From Gracilinanus agilis (lineage: Eukaryota): a DNA stretch of 64,000 nucleotides. The notes beneath the pieces were generated by a model. It saw only the letters and a list, made by a program, of their open reading frames with translations, was not told the DNA's origin and made no database searches. The position numbers were made by a program, and so were the translations under genes. Positions 16,047-39,777 of this stretch are shown in pieces; the stretch's first letter is position 1; each line of letters begins with the position of its first letter. The stretch covers positions 777,971,002 to 778,035,001 of the forward strand of contig NC_058130.1 in assembly GCF_016433145.1 (NCBI RefSeq), read 5' to 3'.

Positions 16047-16086
<40 letters not shown>

Positions 16087-16700: not shown

Positions 16701-17187
16701 AATTGGAAAAAGCTGAGCAGAAAGAACTCTTATCAATTCAAGCATATCTTCCCACATTTATCTAATTTCCTTGTCTATTAGACTTTTTTCTATAATATAG
16801 TAGTATTCTGTTTGTTCCATTTTATTGACATTTGTTCAGTCATTTATTTCCTAGTAGATTTCGTGGGTTTTTTGCTTCACAAAAGTGCTGCTGTGGATAC
16901 TTAGGAAAATATGAGACCTTTCCCCCTGTTAAGGTTACTGAGATTTGCACATAGCAAGAGAATCTCCCAAGATAATATCCAAAAGTTTCAATTGTTCAGT
17001 ATCCTAGGAAAAGATAGGGCTTTTACAGACCATAACCTTGAATCATTTAGGAAGACATATATCTGTTTTAGATGCTTTGAAAACATCTAGACTATATGAT
17101 TTAATTAATTTGTGTACTTACACCTATCGGCACATTTTATTTGAAATATTTTCATTCTACCAGGTTCTTTGCTGAAGTTCCTGCCAT

Positions 17188-17338
17188 GAATGAATGAATA
17201 AAGAAATGAATGAATAAAAAAGCATCGATTAATCAATGATTATTCCCAAGGCACTTTGCTCAGTGCTAGGGATTCTAATAAAATAGCCCATGCTCACAAG
17301 GAGCTCGTGTTCTAATTGGGGAGAAGACAATACCTATG
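17188..17338 (-). mobile_element. L2 3' terminal tail
   Basis: tgaatgaatgaataaa...gctcagtgctagggattc...gctcacaaggagctcgtgttctaattggggagaagac. Confidence 0.85.
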
Positions 17339-18680
17339 GAAAGCTTCAGCTCCAAGTCAGAGGGAAAGGTCCCACAGGCCTTTTGGAGCAGCAGCAAAAG
17401 AGATGACATGCCTCTTCTAAAACATCATTTTCACTGATAAAATCATAGTGTCTGTGTTGAACTATTTGACAGGGCCAAGTCTTAGTAAAAAACCTTCCAT
17501 CCTAGATCTTCAGTAGCGATGGCCACAGCCCTGCAGGGCCACGTCCAGGCTGCATCTCCCCAGAAGTGATTTCCCAGGATGGTGGTTGAAGACACTGGGC
17601 AAGAAATATGACTATTTCAAAGTCTCTTGAGTTCTGTGTTCTGAGCTATCTCCATCAGAACCTAAGGGGGCATGGTGGTGGTTAAAATGATGGTAATTTG
17701 ACCTGCTTAGCTCTTGCTGCTTCCTGCATCTTCCTGACTGCTTCAGCTAGGCTGCCTTGCTTCTCTGTGTGTGGCAGTTGGTTGGTAGTCTGTGGGGATG
17801 ACTTGTCCCTTCTCCCAGGGATTGATTGCTTCCTTTGACAATGGCTGTAGAGGCAGAACTGGAAGGTACTGTCACTGCCAAGTTTCCATCATCTACCTTC
17901 TTGCTGATGGCAATGGCAAGGAAGGTGAACCCTTCAGGACCAGGGTGGAAAGCAGATCTAGTGGTTTTGGGGGACACTGCCACTCTCAAGGCTCTGAGGT
18001 TCAGGGTCCTGATTTATTACTTTTCAGAGTCTAAGGAGAGATGGTGGTCAGAGTGGTGGTGGTCTAACCTGCCTGGAACCTTCTCTCTCCCTCAAAGGGG
18101 TGCTTCAGTTGCTTGTCTGCTCTGTAAGTGGCAGTTGGTTGGCAGTTGGTAGGGATGACCAGGCCCTTCTCCACAGGAGTTGCTTTCATGGATGATGGCT
18201 CTGAAGACTAGGACGAAAGCAAGTTTTTTTAATTCGAGAGGTATGGATGTTCCCAAAGATCTTGGGTTCAAGGTCCTGAGCTCTCTTTACTGGAGTCTGC
18301 GGGGGCATAGTGATCAAGGTTGTGGTGGTGGGGTTGATTTGCTTGGCACATGCTATCTCCTTCATCTTCCTTCAGTGGCCTCCTTCAGCTGGGCTTGTTT
18401 ACCTTCTGATGGGGGTGGCAGTTGACAGTTGGTGGGAATAGCTGGCCTCATCTCTACAAGGATCATTTCCTTAGATGATGGCTGTGGGGGCTAGGCTGGA
18501 TATGAAGTTGGTGATCTGGGAATTGCTCCCATTTCCAGGACTTAATTATCTGTATGGTGATGGTTAAGGGAATGGGTTCCTTCTATAACTTTTCTTAATG
18601 ATGGCTGCAAGGCTTGGACTAGGAGCAGAAAGCTCTAGTGCTCTCATCCTAAAACCTCTGGTTTGATTCCACTCAGTGTT
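17339..18680 (-). pseudogene. YBX3-like: YBX3-derived relic: 3-4 tandem decayed copies of the exon-1 N-terminal coding region followed by a broken cold-shock domain
   Basis: Minus strand 17496-17403 reads KVF/TK/LGPVK*FNTD/YDFISENDVLEE versus YBX3 [31 protein letters not shown]. cttggccctgtcaaatagttcaac compares with the recalled YBX3 cttggcactgtcaaatggttcaac. Upstream reads GDAA...ATED..KV, and the repeat units read TTT..P.....QDPEPQSLESGSVPQ. Confidence 0.85.
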
Positions 18681-19134
18681 TCTTGAGTATCCATTTTGGG
18701 CAAATTCTATGCTAAGTAGGCCAAGAGGGAGATGCAAAGATAATTAAAGACAGGCTCAGCAGGCAGGGAACATGCACAGACGCATACTTATATTCTAGTT
18801 GGAGAGATAATGTAGATGTGGCTCAGCCATAGACAGATTGAAGGACTGAGAGTCAGGGGCCCTGGATTCTGTCATGAATTGGCTCTGGGTCCTTGGGCAA
18901 GTCCCTCTCCCTTGGCCTCATTTACCTCCTCTGTCAAATGAGATAGGCCAGATGCATCTATTGATGCAGCAAAGGAAGCTTAAAAGAACCACTGTCTCTC
19001 TCCACTTTGGGCATCAAAGATTGAGGGCAACGCCAGTCTGAGACTAAGGGTGTTCAACCGAATTGGGCTCAGAGCCAGACTCAGTGATGAAATAAAATCG
19101 CCTCACCTGTTTATAGTGTTCCACTCATCAAACA

Positions 19135-27935: not shown

Positions 27936-28429
27936 TTTAAGTTTTGCCTGGGCAGTTATGTGACTCCAATTCTAGCACAATCTTGGTTAAGATCTCCAGC
28001 ATTATTTTTGAGATTTGTATTTGTGGCATGAATATTTGTGGTCTGTCAGTCGAGCTTGTGCTAGATAATTTTAGTCACTAGGTAACATTGCTAGATATTC
28101 AGCAAGTACTAAATTTTTACAATCTAAAGTTATGTGTGGTCTGATTCCTGCCATTCCCATTCATAATCTGCCCTGGTTACTCAATCCAGGTTCCTTAAGG
28201 ACAACTCTTCTGCCACTCTTGATGGTAATGACCTGGCCCTGAGTTGCCTATGACTCAGTCACTTTTTCACTGCTTATTTGTTGCTATTATTGACTGGTTT
28301 CCATTTTGTGCTACCAAAGATAGTGCCTTTTGATTTTCATTCTTGGATCTTGGCCATTTCTGGAGGTGAACCATTTTTTGTATAAAAACCTAGTGACATA
28401 TGTCTGTGCATCTACAGCTGGTCTTCTCC

Positions 28430-37235: not shown

Positions 37236-39777
37236 AAGCTTGAGAGGATGAAAAAGCAGTCATAGTCATATTGCATGAACATGCGATGGGGCATCATGTG
37301 TTCATCTTTTTGTGAATCACAGTGTGATTGATACTTTTTCATTAAACACTGTCCTTCTGGAAGGGATAGGACAAATACTTGGGGCTACACTGGACTTCCA
37401 GCCATGTTGGCTCAGTGCCAACTGGGCATGGGTAAGTCTTTGTTATTCATGCCATCACCAGGGCCCCTCTGACTCCAAGTGATCAGATTCCACTTGTTCA
37501 AATAGACAATCTGATTGGCCCAACCGACCCTTCTTGCCTTTGAGTGATTGGAATTACATTCACTTTTAGTCCAGTTTCCTATAGGGAGATTCTATCTCCC
37601 TGCTCATTCTTTTTCAGGGTTATTGGTGTGTATCAAAGAAACTTAAGTAATTCAACAAACTTTTATTGAGTACCTTAAAATAAGAATAAGATCTCCTTTC
37701 CAATCCAGACTCCAATCAATCAATTAATAAACATTTATTAAATACTGGTGGTATGCCAGACACTATGCTGATTATGGCCATATAAAGACAGTCAAAAATG
37801 ATGCATGTCCACAAGGAGCTTCTGTTCTAACAGAAGAGACCACATGTAAATAAAGGGGGACATACAATTTACATATGGAATGGCTGGAAGGTAACCTTCC
37901 TGGGAAAGGTTCTAATATCTGTAAGGATCAAGCAAAGCCTCCTGCCTACTGGTGTGAGCAAGTTGCTATAAGCAAACCAGTAAAACAATATCATGAGCTG
38001 GAATATGGAGAGTGAGGAAGAATAAGAGTCCTTGAAAGGTGAAAAGCTTTAAATGCCAAACAAGAGATTAAATGTCATTGTGGAAATAATGGAGAGTCTT
38101 TCACATTTGTTGATGAGGGGAGATTCCTAGTTCAGACTTCTGGACAGCTGCCAAAGTGATAGTCCTAGAGGATAAGTGGGACCACAAGATGCCCCCCGCC
38201 CAACCCCATCAGACAAACTCCACTGACTCTTTATTACCTCCAGGACCAAATGCAGATGACTCTGTTAGACACTTTACATAGCCTGGTTCTATCTTCTTTT
38301 CCCGAGTTTATTAAACATTGCTCCTCTTCATGAACTCTCTACTTAAGTAAAGTGTATATCCCCAGGGTAAGCTAGTGTAATACCAGGCACATAATAAGAG
38401 CTTAATAAATATTTGATTGATTGAATCCCCATAGGAAACAGTCCCCATTGCATCTCTGACCTTTATATAAAATGTCCTCCATAGACACTCTCTTCCTCAC
38501 TTCTGCCTCTTTGAATTCTGAACAGCCTTCAAGGCACAGCTCAAGTCTATCTTTCCCTCAAGCCCTGTCCTGATGTCCAGTTCTAGCTGCTAATGCCTCC
38601 TCCCAAAAGATGCCTTAGATATGTTCTCTATGTATTTTGTAAATACATACATGTATGCATACTGCCGCCTCTAATGTAGTAGTATAAGCCCTATGAAGGT
38701 AAAGATTGTTTTATTTTTGTCTATGCCCCCAGAGTCTGACAGTGGTAGTCATTTAATAAATGATTGGTAGTTGATTAATTTCCATGAATGAAATTGTGCT
38801 GAGTACTGAGTTGACAAGGGCAAACAAAATAAAATTCTACCATAATGTGTGTGCCCTTAAGTGTTTATAGCCTTGAGGCAGAGAGTGTGAGCAGCCCAGA
38901 GAAATGATGTAATGTGTGCCAAGATTGTAGAGCTAGTTGTCAAGACTGCCCCTGGTTATGCCTTGGACCAGGGTGCAGACAGGGGTCCATACCCACCATG
39001 ACACCATTCTCCCCCTGAAGATACAGAAGTAAAAATCTCATAGGAAGGTGAGGGGGAAAAAGAGGGAACCCTTGAGGTTACCAAACCCAACCTGAGACCG
39101 AGAGGGTCACACCAGTCAGTGGTAGAACTGGCATTCCAGCCCCAGGCCTCGGCCTCTCATCCAATGCACTTTTTGATGTCCTGTGTTCCACCACATGGGC
39201 TCTGCCCTGGCAGAGGTTTTGAGAATGGCAAACAAGCACACAAGCAATTGTGAAATAATAGAGAACCAAAGAACCAGTGCACAAAAACTATTCAAAGTCT
39301 AAGAATGAAAAGTCAATTCTCCCTGGGGATATTAGGCAAGTTTCATGGAAGAGGAAGCATTTGAACTGAGTCTAGAAGGATTTTAGCCTATGGAAATATT
39401 TGAGGAAAGGCAATGCAGGCATGAGATGCAATAGGAAGAAAAGCACAGAGACTCCACAGTAATGTGTAGGCTCTTACATAGGAGACAAAGTAGTACAGGT
39501 GGCTGGAGGATGATGAGAGAAAGGCAAGAAGAAGCCAGAGGGTGGAGGGCTTGTTGGATAGAGTCAGTTGGAAGAGAGTGGGGCTTAATCATTCTGGCTT
39601 CCAAGTTCTTGAAGTTGCACAGCCAAGAGGCATCCTGCAGATGAGACTCAAAGGCAGGTCCTCAGTGGAATATTCCCTGTACTATTCTTGGGGGCCTTGA
39701 GCAAGGCTCCATATGCCCCCACACCAGGAGTGGGAAAAGCTTTTTCGGAAATTCTGCCATTAGCAATAGGGCGGGGC

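What the first reader, a model, noticed from the sequence alone, without database searches (positions are those of the whole stretch)
17540..18680. YBX3 exon-1 coding region tandemly repeated 3-4 times
Seen in sequence: diverged units about 260-370 bp apart. A (G/N)PGGD-like segment recurs at about 17553, 17809, 18166 and 18449. A Thr-run plus QDP-like segment recurs at about 17626-17700 (AGQITIILTTTMPP*VLMEIAQNTELK), 17991-18063 (AG*TTTTLTTISP*.../QDPEPQSLESGSVPQ) and 18261-18329 (TTTTLITMPPQTPVKRAQDLEPKIF). These match YBX3 AGEATTTTTTTLPQAPTE...PQDPAPKSPVGSGAPQ as recalled. Only the unit nearest the tail continues into the cold-shock domain. Inference: either the source was a marsupial YBX3 paralogue with an expanded N-terminus, or the GC-rich head was multimerised like L1 promoter monomers, giving the element an internal promoter array.
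Basis: partly seen in the sequence, partly recalled or inferred. Interest (0 to 1): 0.75.

Follow-up and report, generated by a model that had tools for sequence, protein, structure and literature searches.

The report
Dead Y-box retroposon with repeated head
This is a very old, dead copy of a marsupial jumping-gene family made from the front of a Y-box (YBX3-like) messenger RNA joined to an L2 tail, and here that front part stands four to five times in a row; the repeats are real and ancient but show no sign of present function.

Summary
On the minus strand, 17482-18650 is a diverged head-to-tail array. It has three full units (263-352 bp), one internally deleted unit, a 5'-truncated remnant and a last partial unit. 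Only the last unit runs into a Y-box cold-shock-domain (CSD) remnant, which is fused to an L2-type 3' tail.

- **Age:** units are 58-62% identical (K2P 0.55-0.67) and roughly equidistant.
- **Not an assembly artefact:** the same array lies at the orthologous locus of a second species.
- **Dead:** 17-24 stops per frame, CpG o/e 0.07, and no slower change than the flanks between the two species.
- **Part of a dispersed family:** unit pieces and the CSD occur in tens of other contigs in three organisms. Their consensus next to the window's YDFISEND reads TVKWFNIRNG, and the composite hits YBX1/YBX2 CSDs at E 1.6e-6.
- **YBX3 assignment:** No real YBX3 sequence could be fetched.

The array most likely predates this insertion, so the head was multimerised in the source element. 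Promoter function and a coding paralogue are untested. The scan had already found this Y-box/L2 family on other DNA of this genome; the repeated head is the new detail.

The parts
17186..17215 (-). Terminal tetranucleotide repeat of the L2-type tail: (ATGA)7.5 on the + strand, (TCAT)n as read on the element's strand
   Evidence: TRF row; sequence
17186..17341 (-). L2-type 3' tail. It is clear from about 17330 (TCTCCCCAATTAGAAC at 17324-17309) to the terminal repeat
   Evidence: Aligns with three other L2-type 3' ends in the window, A2. nhmmer hit to 37714-37843. An independent organism-B contig spans the CSD/tail junction at 17320-17398 (record 10). Identification as L2 rests on my knowledge of the L2/MIR 3' end
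17342..17481 (-). Decayed Y-box cold-shock-domain remnant: LGPVK*FN 17479-17456, YDFISEND 17447-17424, GAEA 17353-17342. It is frameshifted and about 48 nt shorter than I expect from recalled YBX sequence
   Evidence: The consensus of other copies next to 17447 reads TVKWFNIRNG. The composite peptide hits YBX1/YBX2 CSDs at E 1.6e-6. The single-frame window piece alone gives nothing in Pfam or PDB
17482..17589 (-). U0, the last partial unit. It starts at the recurring CA(G/A)CCA(T/C)CAT motif, holds the GNHFWGDAA / ATEDLGWKV readings, and runs into the CSD
   Evidence: Local alignment to U2 has z 6.5 and to U3 z 3.5 against shuffles. Beyond 17535 the similarity to the units is no longer significant
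17575..17850 (-). U1, full unit (263 bp motif to motif)
17838..18202 (-). U2, full unit (352 bp). It contains a private extra segment of about 90 nt at 17864-17955, and the 75-nt segment 18109-18185 that is the most widely dispersed piece
   Evidence: Summed contig depth is 1465 against 28.4 for single copy at 18109-18185, and 28.4 at 17878-17954
18190..18487 (-). U3, full unit (285 bp). It holds the longest uninterrupted YBX3-like reading, TTTTLITMPPQTPVKRAQDLEPK
18475..18610 (-). U4, a unit with an internal deletion of about 140 nt. The start motif, a decayed Thr-run (ACCATCACCAT at 18564) and the pre-motif part are kept
   Evidence: A1 alignment
18598..18650 (-). U5, the 5'-truncated remnant of a further unit (only the part before the start motif)
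   Evidence: A1 alignment and reading. Weak, by eye
18650..18815 (-). Separate L2-type 3' end that abuts the 5' end of the array. Not shown to belong to the element
   Evidence: A2 alignment

Best explanation
The stretch 17186-18650 (minus strand) is a neutral, decayed, 5'-truncated copy of an old dispersed marsupial retroposon. The retroposon's front is the 5' part of a spliced Y-box (YBX3-like) mRNA and its back is an L2 3' tail, so it was presumably copied by L2 reverse transcriptase, which recognises that tail. In this copy the pre-CSD head is present as a head-to-tail array: U5 remnant, U4, U3, U2, U1, then U0 running into the CSD. The head runs from about the Thr-run to just before or at the start of the cold-shock domain; by recalled human YBX3 numbering that is about 89 codons or 267 nt, close to the 263-285 bp units. 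The array is about as old as the family itself. It most likely existed already in the source element that was copied, as a monomer-like multimerised head, and did not arise at this locus. Shown here: the array, its age, its presence in a second species, its decay, the dispersed family, and the Y-box type of the CSD. Inferred: the YBX3 origin of the units, the pre-insertion origin of the array, and mobilisation by L2.
For: Array and units. Age: pairwise identity 58-62% and K2P 0.55-0.67, nearly equidistant, against 6-11.5% between the two species. Orthologue: one organism-B contig is colinear over 16811-19030 with no unit gained or lost (record 9). Decay: 17, 17 and 24 stops in the three frames, longest open stretch 88 aa, CpG o/e 0.07; species differences of 8.1% and 11.5% in the array against 6.1% and 8.8% in the flanks. 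Family: 169-306 contigs per run were laid at 80% or more in organisms A, B and C. Depth was about 51x single copy at 18109-18185, 26x at 17416-17492 and 4-10x over the other unit parts, while the flanks were single copy. CSD: the loose-end consensus in all four runs translates to TVKWFNIRNG; together with the window's YDFISENDVLEEA it hits Y-box proteins at E 1.6e-6, against 0.015 or worse for bacterial Csp and 0.14 for Lin28. YBX3-likeness of the units. Pre-insertion origin: (a) within the 75-nt segment, U1 and U2 are as far apart (80%) as U2 is from unrelated copies (80-86%). (b) Other copies come in two forms. One is a unit-type carrying the 11-nt duplication seen in U1-U3, in about 50 contigs. 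The other is a U0-type without it, in 8 contigs, with the consensus given before 17545. Both forms stand in tandem here. (c) An independent organism-B contig joins a U0-type start to a unit-type segment (joint 17589 to 18109).
Against: No real YBX3 sequence, and no second full copy of the family, could be brought in by reference. P2 alone is no better than chance hits elsewhere in the window. The Thr-run is low-complexity. Contig depth is a poor copy-number measure. The two-type argument rests on short, noisy consensus strings with 0.6-0.7 agreement. The joint at 17589 to 18109 has an unknown number of letters between its sides. The 3' breakpoint of the unit cannot be placed within 17535-17470. 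The single-frame CSD piece of this copy fails Pfam and PDB searches on its own.
Confidence: 0.6

Rival explanations
1. The array arose at this locus after a single-headed copy had inserted, by unequal exchange or replication slippage, perhaps between the similar ACCACCAT-type motifs at the unit start and in the Thr-run. It is then a private feature of this copy.
For: No other copy with several units could be read directly. U4's internal deletion and U2's private 90-nt segment show that local rearrangement did occur here. The start motif and the Thr-run are similar short repeats.
Against: Units are as diverged from each other as separate family copies are, and are nearly equidistant. Four or more rounds of duplication would therefore have had to follow insertion almost at once. 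Unit-type and U0-type forms both occur in other copies.
Confidence: 0.2
2. The array was made during reverse transcription. The L2 enzyme reached the 5' part of the Y-box RNA and jumped back onto the same or another Y-box RNA several times, as in the double template jumps described for LINE chimeras.
For: Multi-part chimeras made by LINE template jumps are documented (PMC2104539, found). The element itself is a chimera of two RNAs. An L2 3' end abuts the 5' end of the array.
Against: Jumps are expected to land at the 3' ends of RNAs and to leave each unit starting at the RNA's 5' end. Here the units start near codon 8 and no 5' UTR is recognisable. The two-type pattern in other copies points to inheritance. 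Junction detail is lost at this age.
Confidence: 0.08
3. The source was a coding marsupial YBX3 paralogue whose N-terminal region was repeated in frame, and this copy is its retro-copy.
For: A unit of about 267 nt would keep the reading frame (inference from recalled numbering). One frame reads (I/L)PTNC(Q/H) in all three units.
Against: Stops occur at about the frequency I estimate for random sequence of this base composition in all frames (17-24 in about 435 codons). There is no constraint between species. Word searches with two pieces found no protein at all, though their length limits make this weak.
Confidence: 0.05
4. The units are not YBX3-derived. The resemblance comes from low-complexity runs (ACC repeats, Pro/Ala-rich readings), and the head is some other sequence joined to a Y-box CSD, for example a retroelement-own N-terminus.
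For: P2 alone ties with unrelated places in the window, and a Thr-run elsewhere scores as high as the units for P1. Another first-reader note in this scan read such a head as 'non-YBX' (s1-181969). The reference strings are unverified.
Against: The colinear joint score is the best in the window and beats the shuffles. The order Thr-run, QDP, AHVAGN-like motif, GGD-like, SLATAA-like, EDxxKKV-like and the spacings fit recalled YBX3. The units are continuous with a Y-box-type CSD.
Confidence: 0.05

Closest known systems
Mouse L1 5' monomer arrays (A, Tf, Gf types; from my knowledge)
   Same: Tandem units of about 200-300 bp at the 5' end of a LINE-type retroelement. The outermost unit is truncated and the last unit differs from the upstream ones.
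   Different: Those monomers have tested promoter activity and belong to an autonomous L1. Here the units derive from a host mRNA coding region, sit on a non-autonomous L2-tailed element, and are dead. Promoter activity is untested.
LINE-made chimeric retrocopies by template switching (U6/L1 chimeras, PMC4476161; tripartite chimera with double jumps, PMC2104539; L1 recombination with diverse RNAs, bioRxiv 10.1101/2025.02.02.635956)
   Same: The 5' part comes from a cellular RNA and is fused to the 3' part of a LINE. More than one jump is possible.
   Different: Those are mostly single insertions made by L1 or fungal LINEs. This one carries an L2 tail, became a dispersed family, and has a repeated head. 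None of these papers mentions Y-box genes or marsupials (for the preprint).
L2-mobilised marsupial non-autonomous repeats (MIR/THER1, MdoRep1; PMC2910653, PMC3403934)
   Same: [quoted passage not shown] They are old and present across marsupials. MdoRep1 is a named L2-mobilised repeat of about 120,000 fragments whose make-up the two papers read here do not describe; it could be this family's library name.
   Different: MIR-type SINEs have tRNA-related heads, and none is found here. Identity with MdoRep1 could not be tested because no repeat library is on hand.
SVA elements (from my knowledge)
   Same: A composite non-autonomous retroposon with an internal tandem-repeat region of variable length.
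   Different: [quoted passage not shown]
Ordinary YBX3 processed pseudogene
   Same: Derived from spliced Y-box mRNA and decayed.
   Different: There is no poly(A) end. It is cut inside the CSD and joined to an L2 tail, the same junction occurs in independent copies, and the head is repeated.

Membership tests
Tandem repeat array | Head-to-tail copies with significant mutual similarity and constant order of landmarks | tested here: met
   three full units, E 1.7e-10 and 1.6e-4, landmarks in the same order in each
Y-box protein (vertebrate YBX) cold-shock domain | CSD with the Y-box form of the RNP1 region ([18 protein letters not shown]) | tested here: met
   The consensus of other copies plus the window reading hits YBX1/YBX2 CSDs at E 1.6e-6, four orders of magnitude better than bacterial Csp or Lin28. 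The window copy alone in one frame fails
YBX3 specifically (N-terminal region) | Thr-run followed by QDPAPK..., then the AHVAGNPGGD-type segment before the CSD | tested here: inconclusive
The strings could not be verified in any database or paper here, and no marsupial YBX3 was available
YBX3 exon 1 as the unit | Unit ends coincide with exon 1 boundaries | not testable with these tools
   No gene structure on hand (one search found no paper). The 3' breakpoint lies somewhere in 17535-17470
L2-dependent retroposon | L2 3' end with terminal short repeat, same junction in independent copies, dispersed copies | tested here: met
   The tail aligns with other L2-type ends in the window. Terminal tetranucleotide repeat. 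An independent contig spans the junction and tens of dispersed copies exist. That the tail is L2 rests on my knowledge of the consensus, not on a library search
Processed pseudogene (L1-made) | Poly(A) tail and whole 3' end of the mRNA | tested here: not met
   The copy ends in an L2 tail inside the CSD and has no poly(A)
Promoter monomer array (L1-like) | Units present in variable number across family copies | tested here: inconclusive
   Only indirect hints: two unit forms in other copies and one joint. No second full copy could be fetched
Promoter monomer array (L1-like) | Units drive transcription | not testable with these tools
   No RNA run holds the stretch. CpG is fully decayed
Functional protein-coding gene | Open frame and purifying selection | tested here: not met
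   17-24 stops per frame. The array diverges between species at least as fast as the flanks

The most novel reading that the evidence does not exclude
The family's source element carried a multimerised, host-mRNA-derived head that served as an internal RNA polymerase II promoter array. This would have let an L2-dependent, non-autonomous, Y-box-derived retroposon carry its own promoter to new sites, a monomer system like that of mouse L1 but built from a captured coding exon and riding on L2.
Probability: 0.15. Interest if true: 0.6.

Novelty: new variant of a known kind. Interest (0 to 1): 0.33.

Why it matters
An mRNA-derived retroposon normally leaves its promoter behind, so how a Y-box/L2 chimera could spread to many copies is a small open puzzle. 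A tandemly repeated head in the source element would give a simple answer: upstream units acting as promoters for downstream ones. It would also be an L2-side parallel to the L1 monomer arrays of rodents. For this locus itself the result is ordinary: a neutral fossil with no coding capacity or constraint. For annotation, it shows that YBX3-like 'exons' in marsupial introns and intergenic DNA are repeat debris, not gene fragments.

Tried and rejected
- **Pfam and PDB on the 51-aa single-frame CSD-like piece:** nothing relevant.
- **Word-based protein search** with that piece and with the 64-aa U2 piece: no candidates. Neither real YBX3 nor open frames of other copies could be fetched.
- **The large representative search** was not used. 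The pieces are too decayed to reach significance in a library of 1.84 billion proteins, and the operators asked to spare it.
- **Metagenome scan** with a 20-mer of the family's CSD consensus: 16 loci, none similar to the element by blastn; they read as chance matches.
- **Paper searches** for a Y-box-derived repeat, and for the recalled YBX3 N-terminal peptide: nothing. The opossum transposable-element paper (PMC1899126) is not held.
- **Extension of U0-to-unit similarity beyond 17535:** not significant.
- **Rfam and tRNA scans:** nothing.
- **TG/CA excess as a trace of a former CpG island:** only slight and uninformative.

Full report
**What is there**

The feature lies on the minus strand. 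Read 5' to 3' on that strand (high to low coordinates), it has these parts:

- A separate L2-type 3' end at 18815-18650.
- A head-to-tail array of related units from about 18650 to 17482.
- A decayed cold-shock-domain (CSD) remnant at 17481-17342.
- An L2-type 3' tail at 17341-17186, ending in a tetranucleotide repeat.

**The repeat is real**

- The repeat finder reports three-copy families for the Thr-run block and the QDP-like block, spaced 369/266 and 368/267 bases. It also reports two-copy families spaced 357 and 636-637.
- blastn against the whole window gives E 1.7e-10 (U2/U1, 74 bp, 80%) and 1.6e-4 (U3/U1, 176 bp, 66%).
- A recurring start motif, CA(G/A)CCA(T/C)CAT, stands at about 17588, 17847, 18200, 18484 and 18607. 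That gives unit lengths of 263, 352, 285 and 123.
- U1, U2 and U3 align end to end. U4 has lost about 140 nt internally. A short remnant (U5) precedes it. The last unit (U0) shares only its first 70 nt or so significantly with the others (z 6.5 and 3.5) and then runs into the CSD.
- TRF misses the array because the copies are only 58-62% identical.

**Age, and why it is not an assembly artefact**

K2P distances among U1-U3 are 0.55, 0.64 and 0.67, so the units are nearly equidistant.

Logan contigs of a run of organism A hold the whole stretch without a difference; this run may be the source of the window. One 2863-nt contig of a second species (organism B, two runs) is colinear with 16811-19030. 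It shows 6-11.5% differences and the same number of units. The array is therefore several times older than that species split.

**It is dead**

- The three frames carry 17, 17 and 24 stops in about 435 codons, about the number I estimate for random sequence of this base composition. The longest open stretch is 88 aa.
- CpG o/e is 0.07, as in the flanks. GC is 0.485, against 0.35-0.41 in the flanks.
- Between organisms A and B the array differs by 8.1% and 11.5%, and the flanks by 6.1% and 8.8%.
- No RNA run holds the stretch.
- Rfam and tRNA scans find nothing.

**It belongs to a dispersed family**

At 80% likeness, 169-306 contigs per run from three organisms lie on parts of the stretch, while the flanks stay at single-copy depth. 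Relative to single copy, depth is about 51x at 18109-18185, 26x at 17416-17492, 14x at 17339-17415 and 4-10x on most other unit parts.

The 90-nt extra segment of U2 (17864-17955), and U4/U5, are single copy. An independent contig spans the CSD/L2 junction at 17320-17398.

In all four runs the consensus of other copies next to 17447 reads, on the minus strand, TVKWFNIRNG. It is followed in the window by YDFISENDVLEEA. This 23-residue composite hits YBX1, YBX2 and zebrafish YB-1 CSDs at E 1.6e-6. Bacterial cold-shock proteins score 0.015 or worse, and Lin28 0.14. The family's CSD is therefore of the vertebrate Y-box type.

This window's copy alone, in one frame, is too decayed for Pfam or PDB.

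Earlier notes of this scan describe the same Y-box/L2 family elsewhere in this genome. I used them as leads only.

**Are the units YBX3 exon 1?**

I could not obtain any real YBX3 sequence by reference.

- Over all six frames of the 64-kb window, the Thr-run string scores best on U1, U3 and U2, plus one unrelated Thr-run elsewhere.
- The QDP string alone is no better on U2 than at two unrelated places.
- The colinear joint score (Thr-run, then QDP 30-150 nt downstream) is highest in the window on U2: 70, against a mean of 31 and sd of 5.7. U3 and U1 are within the top nine of 4252 positions.
- Of 300 dinucleotide shuffles, 1, 0 and 1 reach the observed score for U1, U2 and U3.
- By my own recollection of human YBX3, the further order of readings and their spacings also fit: an AHVAGN-like motif, GGD-like, SLATAA-like, then EDxxKKV-like in U0. 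Thr-run to the start of the CSD is about 89 codons or 267 nt, close to the 263-285 bp units.

The assignment to YBX3 remains memory-based, and 'exon 1' as the exact unit boundary is untested. The unit's 3' breakpoint lies somewhere in 17535-17470.

**How the array arose**

Three observations favour an array already present in the element that was copied.

1. Within the well-kept 75-nt segment, U1 and U2 are as far apart (80%) as U2 is from unrelated copies (80-86%), and the units are equidistant. The units therefore split at about the time the family spread.
2. Other copies come in two forms. A unit-type, in about 50 contigs, carries the 11-nt duplication seen in U2 with traces in U1 and U3. 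A U0-type, in 8 contigs, lacks it and reads closer to recalled YBX3 (consensus before 17545). Both forms stand in tandem here.
3. One independent organism-B contig joins a U0-type start to a unit-type segment (joint 17589 to 18109).

These are hints, not proof. I could not fetch a second full copy.

The rivals are early local duplication (0.2), template jumping by the reverse transcriptase (0.08), a coding paralogue with a repeated N-terminus (0.05), and a non-YBX3 head (0.05).

**Comparison with what is known**

The structure resembles L1 monomer arrays and SVA-type composite retroposons. The chimera itself resembles LINE template-switch products (PMC2104539, PMC4476161, bioRxiv 10.1101/2025.02.02.635956). 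The use of an L2 tail matches MIR-type marsupial SINEs (PMC3403934, PMC2910653).

I found no paper describing a Y-box-derived repeat. MdoRep1, an L2-mobilised marsupial repeat of about 120,000 fragments, is named in those two papers but its make-up is not described in them. It may be the library name of this family. That could not be checked.

**Verdict**

This is a fossil copy of a family the scan already met, with one new structural detail: a monomer-like repeated head, probably inherited from the source element. Interest is modest unless the array proves to be a family-wide promoter device.

Noticed in passing
window 28330-28400 (minus): The reading KKWFTSRNG matches 19 of 27 bases of the family's CSD consensus. 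It is the second-best six-frame hit in the window to the 23-aa CSD composite (42, against mean 13.8 and sd 3.3). There is no significant DNA match to the main copy and no L2 tail is seen. It may be another very decayed scrap of the family.
   Followed up: partly
window 18650-18815 (minus): A separate L2-type 3' end lies directly against the 5' end of the array, in the same orientation. It is unclear whether this is a neighbour, the insertion target, or part of one multi-jump event.
   Followed up: partly
window 17864-17955: A segment of about 90 nt inside U2 is absent from U1 and U3 and is single copy in all runs. It is a private insertion or a local partial duplication (it contains a second CCATTGCCATCAG-like motif).
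   Followed up: partly
window 18129-18150: An 11-nt tandem duplication (TGGCAGTTGGT x2) sits inside the most widely dispersed 75-nt segment. Traces of it appear in U1 and U3. It is absent from the U0-type consensus of other copies.
   Followed up: partly
   Followed up: partly
window 37700-37860 (minus): Another L2/MIR-type 3' end, the only other place in the window that nhmmer links to the element's tail (E 7e-4).
   Followed up: no
window 18443-18591 (+): A sub-threshold Rfam match to U3 snoRNA (18.2 bits, gathering score 34, E 0.39). I take it as chance.
   Followed up: no
window 16050-16085: A perfect (GT)18 microsatellite.
   Followed up: no
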